Positions 15,470-21,194 of a DNA stretch of 64,000 bases are shown here, one piece after another (within the stretch, counting starts at the first letter, position 1; each line of letters starts with the position of its first letter). A program made the translations under genes and the position numbers. The stretch lies in NCBI GenBank assembly GCA_020891255.1, contig BQFW01000002.1, positions 744,001-808,000 of the forward strand, in the 5' to 3' direction. The DNA comes from Entomortierella parvispora E1425 (Eukaryota; Fungi; Mortierellomycota). The notes under the pieces are model-generated. The model was not told the origin of the DNA and did no database searches. It saw nothing but the letters and a program-made list of their open reading frames with translations.

Positions 15470-15510
15470 CATTCCGTTCATTCATTCATTCATTCATTCT
15501 TTCATTCATT
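15470..15510. repeat. (TTCA)n tetranucleotide repeat in the PDE leader
   Basis: ttcattcattcattcattc run. Confidence 0.85.
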
Positions 15511-16231
15511 ACCGCCTGCTCCTTCTCTTGCGCGCGCGTATCTTTTTGCATCCACCTCCTCGCTCCTCGGCCATCCTTCATTGTGCTCATCCGCAGGATC
15601 AGAAATCGTGCCCCAATCGCCATTGCCAGGCACGCGTTCCTTTATCTCTCACATTCCGTTCTTCCATTCTTTTCATTCTTTTCCCTTTTTTTTTTGATCT
15701 CCTTCCAGAGACTCTTCAGATAAAACTGACTGACTGACCGACCCTTGAACCCTTCCCTTCTCTGTTCACATCACACAGATCGTCGGTGCCTTTCATCTCC
15801 CTTCTCCTTCTCTCCATTGCCAGACCCTCGCCGAGCCCGTCTGTATTTTTAATATCACTCTCCAACTGCAAGGCTCCGCTCAGTTCGCGGCTCCCCTCTC
15901 CTGCAGTTCATATCAGACTGTTCGCCCGTCTGCTCTTCTCCCCTCTCCCTTTCCTTCCCCTCCTTCCCTTTCTTCCCCTCTATTTTCAACTCATTCCTCA
16001 TTTTTTTTCTTTCCTTTTACTCTCTCCCTCCCTTCCTCCCTCCCTCCCATTCTCCGTTGATCGCACGACCGGCACACCAAGCACGACTTTCCAGCCTCTT
16101 TACTGACAAGCGTACATTCAACTCGGACAACTCTCTCGCATCTCGACTCTTCCTCCCTGGGAACGGCATTCACCACCGTGGCCATTTACCCCTTTTCTGC
16201 TCAACAGGCCTTGCCCATACCACCGCCCGCC

Positions 16232-19200
16232 ATGGAGCCAACAGAGTACCTGGTGCTTCTTATTGACCCAAATCTCGATACCCATTCAGCAGTTCCCACC
16301 ACCCCTTCTCAACTTGCAGCCTTCGGCTCCATTGCCCACACGGAAACCCTCAGCAATACGTCTTCGCAATCTCTATGCTCATCGACCTCGACAAGTTCCA
16401 CAGCGACCTCGCACACCTCTAACAGTTCGTCCACCCGCCTATCCCCCCTTCGAAAGACTCAAAGAAGCCCTCGCTCAAAGTCAAAATCCACAGGAACCTT
16501 GGACTCTCGGTCGCGTTCAGAGTCTAGGTCCAGCGATGGGAGTGGTCAACTGTCGTCAATACTCCAGTTGGCAGGTCTAAAAGGTATGAAAATCGTACTC
16601 CCTGGGACACATATTCACACGAGCTATATCTATGAAAGAAACGTGCGCACGGCGTGGCAAGGTTTCGTTTTTCTTCATATTTCCCCCTATCTCCATGAGG
16701 ACGACGGAAACGCCGTCTCTGACTGTTGGCGCGAGCAAAGACTTTATGCTGGATTGTGTATGACCTTGGATGTGGGTCCGGACGGGGTCAATGGCGGACT
16801 GTTGTTGATGTGGCAACCACAGGGACGAACGGAAAGAGCAGGACGAAACAGGCACCTGGATGGATGCACACTATTTTGCTCTCATTGCGACCCTTTTTTT
16901 GTTTTTGGGAACACCCCCTTCATGAGACTCTTTACGCCTCCTTTTTTTGTGCTTGCTCCATGAGCCAGTCCGGGCCTTGGGCAGACCCTTTCTGGAGCCC
17001 AAGGCAGTTGGATCGCTCAAGTACTTGAGCAGTGTGAGAAGGAGAGGGGGGCGAGCTGACAAAACGCGGATACTGGAAGCTGGCTGCTCGCACGAGGGTG
17101 GTTTTTTTTTATTTTTACTTTTATTCTCTTTTGGCTATGCTCTCTTGTGCTGGGTGGGGAATGAATAGACCCGACGGGCTAGAAGGGTTGTGGTGAATGT
17201 GGTGCAGTTCCTATCCTCACGGTGCTGGACTTTGGCACTTGGATCTTTAGGACAAGGACTCGTCATTTGCCTTGCTCCCCTACTTCCTTCTCCCCCTATC
17301 CTGGTGTTCTTTGCGCTCATTCTTCATTTCTTCAAAACACACCAGTCTGTGAAGCGTGCGCTGGGGGATCGTTCTCTTTGTGCTCTGTGTGCCTGCGTCT
17401 TTGCTCCTTTTTTCCCTTTGTGTGGTTTTTTTGTTGTATTTATTCATGTGGTGCGTGTTTGTACTGCTTGGGATGTTTTAATCTGCCCAAAAAAAACGTG
17501 GCAGGGCTTGGAAAAGGGGAGAGTGAGGTGGATCCTGTTACTCACTCTCCGCCCAACGGCCCTCGATTGCTGTCACGTTTTTTGTTGTCCTGTTTGTTCA
17601 CCATGTAAACTGACCAAACTCGCTTCTCCGGCTCACCAATAGTCTTGACGACAGCCACTTTTGAGTCAGCAATGGCCCTGTTGGAGCACCGATCTCCTAA
17701 CGAAACACGACCAATGTTGCTGTTGGTCGATGTCGATGGAGAAGGCTACCTGTCACCTGCGCAGCAAAGGTCAGGACTTCACCAGGACCGTCAACCGCTA
17801 TCAAGAGGATTGAACGGCGAGCATGGCATAGAAAGGTTGACGCAGGAGAAAGGCCAACGTCATCTCAGAGCGACTAGCGACAGCACTGTCACCAAACGGA
17901 CTCAGTCCCGATCTCGGAGACCAGTATCGAAATCAACGAGACAGAATGGCTTGACTGGACTCGAGTTTTTAGAAAACGTTTTACAGGGACTTGCCAAGGG
18001 CTCGTTATATCATATTGTCCCTATAGGTAAGCTTTGGACTTGCGCGCGCTCTTCTATTATTATTATATCAATGAGTATTAACAAGTCTAAAACTTGTCTG
18101 TAGCCGTCACCTCCACCGCGTCCCAGGATAAAATCGCAGAGCTGTTCAATCTAGGAGTCGCAGATGTAGTACTAAAGCCAATCCAGCAGCAGGTGGCAAG
18201 GACCTTGTTCTTGGTAAGAGGAATTGACCGACCTTTGGATCGAAATCAACACTCATCTCGATGGGAGTCTTACTCGGATGATTCATTCTCTCTCGTGCTG
18301 TAGAACATCCATCGTTACAGCAAATACCGGACTGCAGTCACCATTCCAAGATATGCCTCTCAAAAGAACACGCTGGCACTCCCAAGTCATTCACGACTTC
18401 GAAACGTGTTTCTCAAGGATCAATGGTATGTCACGAACTTTGACAATCCTTTCATGGTTTCCCTCTTCATCACCTGCATTCTTACGTAGGATCTTTTTGC
18501 CCCTTCATAGGCTTTCGGATATTCTCATCCAGCACTATTGTCCTACGCCGTCGATGCTCTCTCTGCAGGACTTTCCTAGCATGTCATCTCTGGGGGCCAA
18601 GGAACGTGTCGCTCATCTCAAGAAGAGGCTGCTTTCATGGGACTTTCATCCACATGACCTCTGTGAGGAAGATTTGATGCGATGTGTGGTTATTGTCATT
18701 CAAGAGGTCATGAAGTTGGATGGCCTCGGCGATTTGAACATCCCAGAACGTAAGTTGAACTGTCTGCATTCGCTTCTGTGTTGTCGTAACAGGATCTAAC
18801 TCGAGGGAGCTTATTTTTTAATAGATCTCTTGCATCGCTTCGTGATCGGACTTCGGGACTCGTATCATCGATCGAATCCATATCACAACTTTGCGCACGC
18901 AGTGGATGTTCTTCAGGCAACGTTTTATTTCTTGTGCCGGATGGGCAAGTTGCCATTGTCTGGAACTGGCTATCACCCTCTTCCATCCACCGATAGCGAG
19001 CCATCATCCTCAGAATCAGGATCAACCTCATCCAACGACGATCCACCAGGCGAGAATGTGGAAGGTCGTCTGAAGCACATCCGTGTTCAAGACTTTTTGC
19101 GGCCCGAAGACATTTTTGCATTGGTTGTTGCCAGTATTGGCCACGATGTGGGTCACCCTGGTGTCAACAACATGTTTTTGGTATGAGAGCCGTTCTTCTG

Positions 19201-21194
19201 GAGTTTATTTCAAATGACCCATGTGACGACCACCTTACCACAAGGAAATACTAAGGCTCTTTACCAATTCGCTCTATTTTATTTGTTGTAGATCAATGCA
19301 CATACGCCTCTTGCTCAGGTCTACAACGACAGATCTGTCCTCGAGAGCTTCCACTCCATGGCCCTGTTCCAGGTCATGAAGAAACATGGATTCGAGTGCT
19401 TCGATGTGGACTCACAAAACCGCAAGTTTATGGGTAAGCGATTTGTTATAGCACGATCAAAGACTGTCGAGGTACATGGTTGGACTCTTCTCTTACCCCC
19501 ACAATCTTACATGTCGGATATATCTAGAATTCCGCAAAATGGTAGTGAGCACTATTTTGGCCACCGATATGGGTCTTCATTTTGACTATGTAGGCAAGAT
19601 CAAGGAGCAAAGCGAGCGCCTTCGAATGCGGAATACCCCTGCCGGCCAAATACCAAAGCCAAACCAGGCTAGTATAGATGAGCAGGAGAGACTCGTTCTC
19701 TGCGGAACGCTCATCAAGTGCGCCGATATTAGCAATGCCGTAAGTACCTTTTGGCCCTTTTTTACGAACTCTATACGCCTCAAGATCGCCATTTTCTAAC
19801 AGTGCCTTTTCTTTGTCGCTCAAACAGTCGCGTCCTTTCCATGTTGCAGAGAGATGGTCCTCAGTGCTCTTGCAGGAAATGTGTAACCAAGCAGATATTG
19901 AGAAGGAAATGGCAGTGAGCTCTGGATCACAGCCTGTTCCCGACGTGCAGACAAAGAGCCTTGCGAATGATCCCGGCATGCAGATCGACTCACAGTTGGG
20001 CTTTATCCATGGATTTGCCATGCCGCTCTTTGCTAGCGTCAAAGAAATCATCCCTGGTAAGTCCACATCGATCATCAATCAGCCATATCCCTTGTTAGTA
20101 CATTTACCATTGGGAAGGTGCTAACTTGGGAATTATCTTTTTTTTTAGAAATGTCGTACTGCGTGGAGCTGCTTCAAATCAACCACAAGATCTGGCAGGA
20201 CCGAAAGATGGATTACTTGCAAAATGGAGGATCCGGCCCCTTACCCTTTACAATGACCAAACCTGCAAAAGAAGCCAGTGACTTACCACAAAATTCGTCA
20301 AGTCCTCGCAAGACAGGAACTCATATCCGCGCTAGAAGCCATGGACCAAAGCAGCTAGAGATGGATGTAAAAGGCCAAAGACCAGAAAGCGCGGGAGCCC
20401 CTAAGGTACCAAACGGTACCGTGCGACGCATTTCTAAGCCTGCCAGCACTCCGCCTGCTCCAGCACCAGCACCTGAGAGCTCGGCAGGAGGAAGCTCTAT
20501 TCCACGACCTCGTTCAAGGCCAAAAGCGGCCACTTCAGAAGGAGATGTTCTCCCAAAGACGTATGGACAGGAGAGTCGACTGAATGGCCCGTCTCGCATT
20601 CAATCAAATGGTCGAGTAAGGCAACAGAGCTCTCGAGAGCCAGTATCAAGGATCGCAAGTACAGTAGCCCCCGCGTCTGTACCGTCTACACCTTCGGGAT
20701 CGAGGTCCCGCATTCCTGGAGGCAGGCTGGAAGCAGGAATGTCGCCTCTTGGCAAGCAGGGTGACTCTACTCAAAAACTCGAAACGCCATCGAAACTGAC
20801 ACCTCGTGGTCAACGGTCACCTGGACGTCGTTCGCAGGGACCCCAACAAGGTCATGGTACTCAATCTCATGATACGCACCCCAAGCACGAGAAGAATACG
20901 ACACTTTCGCTTGGAAATGGAGGTGTGGGAGGTACGCCATTGGAACATGGGGAAACCATTGTTCTGGGCTCGCTCTTGCCCGTTGACCTCCTATCCAAGA
21001 GTGCCCCGTCCGACAAATCAACAGCCACTTCATCACCATTATCACCACCCCTTCCAAAGACTCCAGGTTCTATCAAGGCAGTCTCCCCAGGCATTCCTTA
21101 TGGCAGTTTGAGTGGAGGAAAGAGGATACACCAGAAGCAGGATTACTTTGGACCTCAAGCGACCGCCACCGCTGCCACTCAAGATGGTCATTAA
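16232..21194 (+). CDS. PDE2: Class I cyclic-nucleotide phosphodiesterase with N-terminal response-regulator receiver domain (RegA-like/Pde2); exons 16232-16583, 17643-18026, 18104-18213, 18304-18425, 18511-18749, 18825-19180, 19292-19433, 19529-19739, 19828-20056, 20149-21194
   Basis: Catalytic motifs YHNFAHAVD, HDVGHPGVNN, SVLESFH, ILATDM, KCADISN and SQLGFI are present. REC motifs: VLLID, LLLVDVD, GLTGLEFL, IVPIAVTS, GVADVVLKP. All nine introns are GT-AG and in phase. Confidence 0.93.

What the first reader, a model, noticed from the sequence alone, without database searches (positions are those of the whole stretch)
16232..21194. RegA-like receiver-domain phosphodiesterase: candidate direct His-Asp phosphorelay control of cAMP in a fungus
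Seen: the spliced N-terminus holds every element of a CheY-type receiver domain in the correct order. These are beta1 VLLID, alpha1-beta2-alpha2 LSSILQLAGLKVLTTATFESAMALL, beta3 LLLVDVD (candidate phospho-Asp codon 17729-17731), GLTGLEFL, beta4 IVPIAVTS with the conserved Thr, and ELFNLGVADVVLKPI with the conserved Lys-Pro. The domain is split by two Ser/Arg-rich insertions and two introns (one of 1059 nt), so the ORF track hides it. An intact class I PDE domain follows. Established: Dictyostelium RegA (REC-PDE) is activated by phosphotransfer from RdeA. Mammalian PDE8 has a REC-like domain. The canonical Dikarya response regulators are Ssk1, Skn7 and Rim15. Inference: this is an additional fungal response-regulator class that couples hybrid histidine kinases and Ypd1 to cAMP/PKA.
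Basis: partly seen in the sequence, partly recalled or inferred. Interest (0 to 1): 0.75.

Follow-up and report, generated by a model that had tools for sequence, protein, structure and literature searches.

The report
Hidden receiver domain on cAMP phosphodiesterase
A soil-fungus gene for the enzyme that destroys the messenger cAMP starts with a well-hidden, split copy of the bacterial-type 'receiver' switch domain; the fold is real and shared by early-diverging fungi, but it lacks a key metal-binding residue, so it is unclear whether phosphate transfer still switches it.

Summary
A 10-exon gene (16232-21194, + strand, 1070 aa, all introns GT-AG, intron 1 = 1059 nt) encodes a Mortierellaceae Pde2/PdeH-type class I cAMP phosphodiesterase. 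Its first ~290 residues form a complete CheY-type (beta-alpha)5 receiver (REC) fold, interrupted by two disordered Ser/Arg-rich loops.

- **Exon joins:** an intron-free transcript contig of an ortholog and conserved exon 1 in three other genomes support them.
- **REC homology:** a profile of 96 fungal N-termini hits solved receivers (E 1e-9). An AlphaFold model of the ortholog superposes on CheY (Z 15.2, 2.2 A, 126/127 residues).
- **Active site:** the Asp57, Thr87 and Lys109-Pro equivalents (D147, T248, K270-P271) are about 95% conserved. The Mg2+-binding acidic pair is not: the window has Asp-Pro.

I read it as an atypical receiver. A RegA-like His-Asp relay to cAMP is possible (about 0.3) but unproven.

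It is not wholly new. Bourret et al. 2021 list one Umbelopsis family member as an "atypical receiver + PDEase_I", and some Mucorales homologs carry Pfam REC hits. What appears new here is the full fold, the exon 1 that public Mortierellaceae gene models miss, the conservation across Mucoromycota, and a profile link to Pezizomycotina PDE N-termini.

The parts
16232..16583 (+). Exon 1: start codon, beta1 (LVLLID, D12 at 16265-16267), disordered Ser/Arg-rich insert 1 (about 16268-16543), alpha1 (LSSILQLAGLK); ends in phase 1
   Evidence: Conserved in the ortholog transcript P0160 and in genomic DNA of three Mortierellaceae, 1.0-1.35 kb upstream of their annotated starts.
16584..17642 (+). Intron 1, 1059 nt, GTATGA...CAATAG
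   Evidence: A long phase-1 intron at the same place in L003, L004 and L006. No Rfam match.
17643..18026 (+). Exon 2: beta2, alpha2, beta3 (LLLVDVD; D147 at 17729-17731 = CheY D57 equivalent; D149 at 17735-17737), disordered insert 2 (about 17741-17947), alpha3 (GLTGLEFLENVLQGL), start of beta4
   Evidence: Secondary structure comes from the model of the ortholog.
18027..18103 (+). Intron 2, 77 nt, GTAAGC...CTGTAG
18104..18213 (+). Exon 3: end of beta4 (T248 at 18109-18111 = T87 equivalent), alpha4, beta5 (GVADVVLKP; K270-P271 at 18175-18180 = K109-P110), alpha5
   Evidence: Pfam Response_reg E 0.018, profile positions 74-104. All four PDB hits are receiver domains (RssB/Hnr). Column counts.
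18304..18749 (+). Exons 4 and 5 (18304-18425, 18490-18749): linker and helical region before the catalytic core
   Evidence: Colinear with orthologs P0160 and P0005.
18825..20056 (+). Exons 6-9 (18825-19180, 19292-19433, 19528-19739, 19828-20056): class I PDE catalytic domain with YHNFAHAVDV, GHDVGHPGVNN, LATDMG and KCADISN metal/substrate motifs intact
   Evidence: Pfam PDEase_I on exons 6, 8 and 9. Invariant columns. The best PDB sequence match of the family is fungal PDE 6CPT, E 4e-51. The catalytic fold scores Z 38.7 in the P0022 model.
20149..21194 (+). Exon 10: last helices of the catalytic domain, then about 320 residues of low-complexity Ser/Pro/Arg-rich tail (one RRIS site) and the stop codon
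   Evidence: No Pfam family on this ORF. The C-terminal tail of the P0022 homolog (residues 577-720) is modelled as disordered.

Best explanation
The gene encodes the Mortierellaceae ortholog of the fungal high-affinity class I cAMP phosphodiesterase (Pde2/PdeH type). Its N-terminal ~290 residues are a true CheY-like receiver (REC) domain, with two long disordered Ser/Arg-rich loops inserted beside the old phosphorylation pocket (beta1-alpha1 and beta3-alpha3). Shown here: the gene model, the REC fold, the intact PDE, and family-wide conservation of the Asp57, Ser/Thr87 and Lys109-Pro equivalents. Also shown: the Mg2+-binding acidic pair is incomplete (Asp-Pro here). Inferred: the domain is an atypical receiver that regulates the attached PDE. 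Most likely it no longer works by canonical Mg2+-dependent His-Asp phosphotransfer. Instead it would act as a conformational or docking module whose state is set by Ser/Thr phosphorylation or by partner binding at the two inserted loops. That would be consistent with the PKA feedback on Pde2 known from yeast (from memory, not checked here). A residual or re-engineered phospho-Asp chemistry remains a live alternative, because an acidic residue two places after the Asp is conserved in 92% of relatives (a D-x-D motif). The confidence of 0.55 is for the whole statement, including the inferred phosphotransfer-independent mechanism. The REC-fold-plus-PDE part alone I hold at about 0.95.
For: Gene model: an open 1070-codon frame over 10 exons, all GT-AG. 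The ortholog P0160 is encoded by 3.6-kb contigs with an uninterrupted 3420-nt ORF that joins the exon 1, 2 and 3 equivalents. Exon 1 and its long intron are conserved in three more genomes. REC identity: 82 of 96 family N-termini hit Pfam Response_reg at E<=0.1 (best 1.7e-9), and no other family recurs in more than two. The profile search against PDB is best at 9.6e-10 (ARR1), and 59 of the 60 shown hits are receivers. The AlphaFold model of P0160:1-291 has beta1-alpha5 in REC order with core pLDDT above 90. All 50 top Foldseek hits are receivers with probability 1.0. VIA gives Z 15.2, rmsd 2.2 A, 126/127 residues against CheY. The window N-terminus scores E 6e-21 against a profile of distant relatives. 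Atypical status: at the D12 equivalent Asp occurs in 19/75 sequences and at the D13 equivalent in 11/74 (the window has D, P). By contrast the D57 equivalent is D in 92/97, the T87 equivalent is S/T in 90/94, the K109 equivalent is K in 93/97 and Pro follows in 97/97. Specialists classed a family member as an 'atypical receiver' (PMC8510515).
Against: The 95% conservation of Asp, Ser/Thr and Lys-Pro, and of an acidic residue at D+2, is hard to explain if no phosphate chemistry or phosphate-like ligand is sensed. In Pezizomycotina, where the domain is clearly degenerate, Lys and Thr have drifted. The RegA precedent has the same architecture. Earlier notes of this scan report hybrid histidine kinases and a Skn7-like regulator in this genome (unchecked). 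I had no model coordinates, so another acidic residue could complete a metal site, for example the conserved Asp in the L-D-T motif four residues after D12, or D149. No biochemical or expression data exist for this organism.
Confidence: 0.55

Rival explanations
1. RegA-like response regulator: D147 accepts a phosphoryl group from Ypd1 downstream of hybrid histidine kinases, and this switches PDE activity, coupling two-component sensing directly to cAMP/PKA.
For: REC N-terminal to a class I PDE, as in RegA. D147, T248 and K270-P271 are present and about 95% conserved across Mucoromycota, plus a conserved acidic D+2. The triad decays in Dikarya, which suggests it is under selection where retained. 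Histidine kinases are noted elsewhere in this genome (unchecked).
Against: The CheY D13-equivalent Mg2+ ligand is Pro here and missing in about 85% of relatives. Many Mucorales keep the triad with no acidic residue at either aligned pocket position after beta1, so triad conservation does not require the canonical site. Disordered inserts of 70-90 residues sit in the two loops that form the HPt docking face. The CheY Y106 switch position is Val in this lineage. Single sequences stay below Pfam's cut-off.
Confidence: 0.3
2. Exon 1 (beta1 to alpha1) is not part of the main transcript. The protein would start in or near exon 2, as in all public Mortierellaceae gene models, leaving only a truncated, non-folding receiver remnant.
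For: All annotated orthologs (P0005, P0007, P0158-P0185) lack exon 1. A 1059-nt intron is unusually long for a fungus. No RNA run was listed for this DNA. An internal promoter in intron 1 cannot be excluded.
Against: The transcript-type contigs L001/L002 of an ortholog carry exon 1 joined in frame. The coding ends of exon 1, its phase-1 donor and the long intron are conserved in four genomes, while the middle of the exon drifts. AlphaFold packs beta1 and alpha1 into the fold at pLDDT above 90. Distant relatives with short or no introns have the same N-terminal M-D/E-P-x-x-C-x-V beta1.
Confidence: 0.05
3. The receiver-like motifs are a chance resemblance in a low-complexity N-terminus, and there is no REC domain.
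For: Exon-wise Pfam gives only E 0.018 on 39 residues. Exon 2 alone gives only weak calmodulin noise in PDB.
Against: Profile, fold and conservation evidence all agree.
Confidence: 0.01

Closest known systems
Dictyostelium/Acanthamoeba/Naegleria RegA (REC + class I cAMP PDE)
   Same: Same domain order: an N-terminal receiver, then a class I PDE. Phospho-Asp, Thr/Ser and Lys positions are present. One Lichtheimia homolog is even auto-named 'regA'.
   Different: RegA homologs are described with a response-regulator domain whose phosphoryl-accepting Asp is the target of the histidine-kinase relay (PMC3906536). That paper does not mention fungi. The receiver here lacks the second acidic pocket residue, has two 70-90-residue inserts in active-site loops, and stays below Pfam's threshold. 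Orthology to RegA was not tested because no RegA sequence was available by reference.
UramaRR1 of Umbelopsis ramanniana and CanguRR10 of Catenaria anguillulae (Bourret et al. 2021, PMC8510515, Tables S1/S4)
   Same: UramaRR1 belongs to this very family; its listed segment matches the Umbelopsis homologs P0198/P0204/P0219. It is catalogued as an unclassified response regulator with an atypical receiver and PDEase_I. CanguRR10 shows the same 'D-x, D, S, K' pattern with loop inserts and an HD-type phosphodiesterase output.
   Different: That catalogue describes UramaRR1 as missing beta1-alpha1-beta2-alpha2, with an unidentifiable phosphorylation site. Here the full (beta-alpha)5 fold and the Asp are identified. 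The Mortierella elongata regulators listed there do not include this PDE.
Fungal high-affinity cAMP PDE Pde2/PdeH (Candida albicans PDE2 structure 6CPT; Pezizomycotina PdeH-type proteins)
   Same: The catalytic domain is closest to 6CPT (E 4e-51). Pezizomycotina N-termini are homologous to the REC-like domain (hhalign probability 99.3%, E 4e-20 over 172 columns).
   Different: Pezizomycotina have lost the Lys and Thr, and Pfam sees no receiver in them. Budding-yeast N-termini, the region solved in 6CPT, show no detectable similarity to the REC profile (probability 0.6%).
Animal PDE8 (REC-like N-terminus + PAS + PDE)
   Same: A receiver-like N-terminus on a high-affinity cAMP PDE. A PDE8 cluster is the second-nearest by language-model features (score 0.92, a lead only).
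   Different: No PAS domain and no PDE8A_N Pfam match in any family member scanned. The PDE8 catalytic domain is not the best PDB match (E 1e-37, against 1e-42 for PDE4/PDE9).
Plant type-B ARR1 receiver (8XAT, 9H6E)
   Same: The best solved-structure sequence match of the family profile (E 1e-9). It shares Ser at the T87 position and a closely similar G-A-x-D-Y-L-I-K-P motif. VIA gives Z 14.2.
   Different: From general knowledge, not tested here: ARR1 is a canonical, phosphorylatable receiver with a DNA-binding output.

Membership tests
CheY-like receiver (REC) domain, Pfam PF00072 | (beta-alpha)5 doubly wound fold | tested here: met
   The model of ortholog P0160:1-291 (51% identical to the window N-terminus) has E7-11, H94-107, E111-115, H118-126, E136-141, H224-236, E243-249, H254-263, E267-270 and H275-290. 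It scores Z 15.2, rmsd 2.2 A, 126/127 residues against CheY. The window's own spliced protein was not folded because it has no reference.
CheY-like receiver (REC) domain, Pfam PF00072 | Significant sequence/profile similarity to receivers | tested here: met
   Family level: 82/96 N-termini hit Response_reg at E<=0.1, and the profile search against PDB reaches 9.6e-10. Single-sequence level is below Pfam's gathering score: exon 3 gives 15.6 bits and P0160 16.4 bits, against 30.2.
CheY-like receiver (REC) domain, Pfam PF00072 | Phospho-acceptor Asp at the C-terminal end of beta3 | tested here: met
   D147 (17729-17731). The column is Asp in 92/97 sequences. Strand E136-141 of the model ends on it.
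CheY-like receiver (REC) domain, Pfam PF00072 | Thr/Ser at the end of beta4 and Lys(-Pro) at the end of beta5 | tested here: met
   T248 and K270-P271. The columns are S/T in 90/94, K in 93/97 and P in 97/97.
CheY-like receiver (REC) domain, Pfam PF00072 | Acidic pair after beta1 that binds Mg2+ (CheY D12, D13) | tested here: not met
   The window has Asp12-Pro13. The family has Asp in 19/75 sequences at the first position and 11/74 at the second. By the usual five-residue criterion this makes it an atypical receiver.
RegA-type REC-PDE response regulator | Receiver N-terminal to a class I cAMP PDE in one polypeptide | tested here: met
RegA-type REC-PDE response regulator | PDE activity switched by phosphotransfer from an HPt protein to the receiver Asp | not testable with these tools
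   This needs biochemistry. The incomplete acidic pocket argues against the canonical mechanism.
RegA-type REC-PDE response regulator | Common descent with amoebozoan RegA (orthology) | not tested
RegA was not among the 150 best representatives.
Class I cyclic nucleotide phosphodiesterase (PF00233) | HD-type catalytic core with H-N-x-x-H, H-D-x-x-H-x-G-x-x-N, T-D and C-A-D motifs | tested here: met
   Exons 6, 8 and 9 hit PDEase_I. All columns invariant in 66 relatives are present in the window model.
Animal PDE8 | PAS domain between the receiver-like region and the catalytic domain; PDE8A_N family match | tested here: not met
   Neither PAS nor PDE8A_N appeared in any Pfam scan.

The most novel reading that the evidence does not exclude
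The ancestral fungal cAMP phosphodiesterase was a RegA/PDE8-like receiver-PDE. In Mucoromycota, including this gene, the re-engineered receiver (a D-x-D motif instead of the classical acidic pair) is still phosphorylated via Ypd1. Hybrid histidine kinases would then control cAMP/PKA directly in early-diverging fungi, a fourth functional response-regulator class that Dikarya later let decay.
Probability: 0.3. Interest if true: 0.8.

Novelty: new variant of a known kind. Interest (0 to 1): 0.55.

Why it matters
Fungal two-component signalling is usually drawn with three outputs (Ssk1, Skn7, Rim15), and cAMP control as a separate pathway. This gene and its relatives show that the high-affinity cAMP PDE of early-diverging fungi carries a full receiver fold with the phospho-Asp, Ser/Thr and Lys triad under strong conservation. 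Profile comparison also shows that the enigmatic N-terminus of Pezizomycotina PDEs is its degenerate descendant. That gives a concrete, testable candidate for direct cross-talk between histidine-kinase sensing and cAMP/PKA in Mucoromycota, which include mucormycosis agents and mycorrhizal fungi. It also offers an evolutionary bridge between amoebozoan RegA, animal PDE8 and fungal Pde2. On the practical side, public Mortierellaceae gene models of this gene miss the first exon and with it half of the domain.

Tried and rejected
1. RNA evidence from this organism: the look-up of sequencing runs listed no run.
2. Exon 2 alone against PDB gave only calmodulin EF-hand-loop noise from 'DVDGEGYLS' (E 0.26-1.5). 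I rejected it as chance.
3. The search for homologous proteins could not be started from the window, because exons are too short for the length window and read-through is not accepted. Full-length relatives were reached through the representative search with exon 6 and then with P0007. The window's own protein was not returned.
4. The budding-yeast Pde2 N-terminus (solved in 6CPT) as a degenerate receiver: hhalign probability 0.6%. Not supported.
5. Searching PDB with the full-length P0022 model to see its N-terminal domain against 6CPT: the list was filled by catalytic domains. Uninformative.
6. PDE8 relationship: only a language-model lead. No PAS or PDE8A_N match.
7. Rfam on the gene and the long intron: nothing.
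8. Ten literature searches found no paper discussing a fungal REC-PDE in its main text. The only mention found is in the supplementary tables of PMC8510515. The caPDE2 structure paper could not be read.
9. The joined spliced protein was not given to any search or fold tool.
Full report
**Gene model**

The region is one + strand gene of 10 exons:
- 16232-16583
- 17643-18026
- 18104-18213
- 18304-18425
- 18490-18749
- 18825-19180
- 19292-19433
- 19528-19739
- 19828-20056
- 20149-21194

All nine introns begin GT and end AG. The spliced frame is open for 1070 codons.

I built the joined model only inside scripts, from window coordinates, for local alignments. Those tools received single exons by reference, or database orthologs.

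Exon by exon, Pfam finds PDEase_I on exons 6, 8 and 9 (E 8.5e-16 to 9.8e-10). It finds a sub-threshold Response_reg match on the 39-residue exon 3 translation (E 0.018, 15.6 bits, cut-off 30.2, profile positions 74-104). The four weak PDB hits of exon 3 are all receiver domains. Exon 2 alone gives only EF-hand noise.

**Organism and relatives**

My searches agree. A search of 1.8 billion representatives with exon 6 returns Mortierellaceae PDEs first, then Mucorales, Glomeromycotina, Calcarisporiella, Basidiobolus, Olpidium and Ascomycota. A follow-up search with P0007 returned 1221 homologs at E<=1e-20. None of the listed proteins is the window's own. The best full-length identities are about 60%, and up to 75% over partial models.

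**Are exons 1-3 really joined to the PDE?**

No RNA run was listed for this DNA, so there is no direct evidence from this organism. The indirect evidence is strong.
- P0160 (1139 aa) is encoded on Logan contigs of 3.6 kb as one uninterrupted 3420-nt ORF.
- The orthologous genes in the window and in three other genomes carry a first intron of more than 1 kb, so these contigs must derive from spliced mRNA.
- P0160 aligns with the window model from residue 1, is 51% identical over the first 290 residues, and reads straight across the exon 1/2 and 2/3 junctions.
- All public Mortierellaceae gene models start in or just before exon 2. tblastn nevertheless finds exon 1 1.0-1.35 kb upstream in Mortierella claussenii, Entomortierella chlamydospora and M. 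alpina.
- In those genomes the two ends of exon 1 (M-D/E-P-T-E-Y-L-V-L and L-S-S-I-L-R-L-A-G-L-K), the phase-1 GT donor and the long intron are all conserved. The Ser-rich middle of the exon drifts.

**Is it a receiver domain?**

Yes.
- Of 96 N-termini of this PDE family, 82 hit Pfam Response_reg at E<=0.1 (best 1.7e-9). No other family recurs in more than two.
- A profile of these N-termini finds 187 PDB chains at E<=1. Of the 60 shown, 59 are receiver domains and one is a de novo designed protein; the best is plant ARR1 at 9.6e-10.
- AlphaFold2 on P0160:1-291 with this alignment gives beta1-alpha1-beta2-alpha2-beta3-alpha3-beta4-alpha4-beta5-alpha5 with core pLDDT above 90. It also gives two disordered loops, residues about 18-93 and 145-222.
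- The 50 best Foldseek matches are all receivers at probability 1.0.
- VIA-align superposes 126 of 127 CheY residues at 2.2 A, Z 15.2.
- The window's own N-terminus scores 61 bits (E 6e-21 for a one-sequence search) against a profile built only from non-Mortierellaceae members. That alignment runs from alpha1 in exon 1 to alpha5 in exon 3.

**Active-site audit**

In the alignment of 97 sequences:

| CheY position | Window residue | Family conservation |
|---|---|---|
| D+2 | D149 | acidic in 89/97 |
| T87 | T248 | Ser or Thr in 90/94 |
| K109 | K270 | Lys in 93/97 |
| P110 | P271 | Pro in 97/97 |
| D12 | D12 | Asp in 19/75 |
| D13 | P13 | Asp in 11/74 |

The classical acidic pair after beta1 is therefore not conserved. 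The model places beta1 at residues 7-11, as in CheY, so D12 pairs with CheY D12 and the Mg2+ ligand D13 is missing.

Many Mucorales paralogs have no acidic residue at either position yet keep the triad. One subclade keeps an Asp at the second position. The CheY Y106 position is Tyr or Phe in most lineages but Val in Mortierellaceae.

By the usual five-residue criterion this is an atypical receiver. That is also how Bourret et al. classed the one family member they catalogued (PMC8510515).

**Catalytic domain**

All motifs that are invariant in 66 relatives are present in the window model. The closest solved sequence is the fungal PDE 6CPT (E 4e-51 for the family's catalytic region). A model of a compact homolog matches PDE9/PDE4 catalytic domains at Z 38. 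The C-terminal ~320 residues are low-complexity. No Pfam family matches them, and the corresponding tail of P0022 is modelled as disordered.

**Wider family**

Pezizomycotina PDE N-termini give no Pfam receiver hit. Their profile nevertheless aligns with the Mucoromycota REC-like profile over 172 columns, from beta1 to alpha5 (hhalign probability 99.3%, E 4e-20). They keep the beta3 Asp but have lost Lys (Asn/Ser-Pro) and Thr.

Budding-yeast N-termini, the region solved in 6CPT (E 5e-43 to their profile), show no detectable similarity (probability 0.6%).

The receiver thus looks ancestral to the fungal Pde2-type enzyme. It is well kept in Mucoromycota and Basidiobolus, degenerate in Pezizomycotina, and unrecognisable in yeasts.

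**Mechanism**

What is shown is a receiver fold fused to an active-looking cAMP PDE. It has a conserved Asp/Ser-Thr/Lys pocket, an incomplete metal site, and two long disordered Ser/Arg-rich loops inserted exactly in the loops that flank the pocket and form the HPt docking face.

I judge an atypical, probably phosphotransfer-independent regulatory receiver most likely (about 0.55). Control would come through the inserted loops. These contain conserved islands ('SRSRSESRSSDGS', 'RHLRATSDST') that look like kinase or docking motifs. This step is inferred.

The RegA-like phosphorelay gets about 0.3. The triad and the D-x-D motif are conserved far better than in the clearly degenerate Dikarya domains, and earlier notes report histidine kinases and a Skn7-like regulator in this genome (unchecked).

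**Novelty**

The architecture is known from RegA of Dictyostelia, Acanthamoeba and Naegleria. The paper I read on it does not mention fungi (PMC3906536). It is also known from PDE8.

For fungi I found only database-level traces and two rows in the supplementary tables of PMC8510515. The database traces are precomputed PF00072 on some Mucorales homologs and one 'regA' name. The supplementary rows are:
- UramaRR1, described there as missing beta1-alpha1-beta2-alpha2.
- CanguRR10, from Catenaria anguillulae.

The Mortierella elongata regulators listed there do not include this PDE.

As far as I could search, four points are new:
- the complete fold;
- the exon 1 that public models miss;
- the conservation statistics;
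- the link to Pezizomycotina.

I class it as a new variant of a known kind, of moderate interest.

Noticed in passing
L003:3418-3777, L004:3596-3928, L006:3289-3651 (and window 16232-16583): All public Mortierellaceae gene models of this PDE seen here (P0005, P0007, P0158-P0185) omit exon 1. It lies behind a conserved first intron of 1.0-1.35 kb. Only the transcript-derived P0160 has it.
   Followed up: yes
window about 16505-16543 and about 17850-17890: Inside the fast-evolving disordered inserts, two short islands are conserved across Mortierellaceae: 'SRSRSESRSSDGS' just before alpha1 and 'GQRHLRATSDST' in insert 2. They are candidate Ser/Thr-kinase or docking motifs beside the receiver pocket.
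   Followed up: partly
alignments A4 and A3 (Pezizomycotina proteins P0152, P0124, P0138, P0134, P0098): The N-terminus of Pezizomycotina high-affinity PDEs is homologous to the Mucoromycota REC-like domain (hhalign probability 99.3%, E 4e-20), although Pfam sees nothing there. The beta3 Asp is kept; Lys and Thr are lost.
   Followed up: yes
alignment A3 (e.g. P0044, P0059, P0206, P0208, P0239, P0241, P0203): A Mucorales subclade has V-V-[T/A]-D after beta1, an Asp at the CheY D13-equivalent, and P0203 has D-D. Other paralogs in the same order have no acidic residue there. Paralogs may therefore differ in phospho-competence.
   Followed up: no
window 17729-17755: 'LVDVDGEGYLS' after beta3 resembles an EF-hand loop and draws weak calmodulin hits (E 0.26-1.5). 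It is not conserved in orthologs (D-V-D-T-D-L-E-L) and is taken as chance.
   Followed up: partly
window 15500-16100: The 5' flank of the gene is a strongly pyrimidine-rich tract on the + strand (GC skew about -0.5, AT skew -0.42). It may be a promoter or 5' UTR, though I found no direct evidence for that.
   Followed up: no
P0087 (1945 aa) in alignment A1: One member of alignment A1 also matched nucleoporin domains (Nucleoporin2, FG repeats, Nup98 GLEBS). I assume it is the 1945-aa P0087, which was not checked. This is probably a fused gene model.
   Followed up: no
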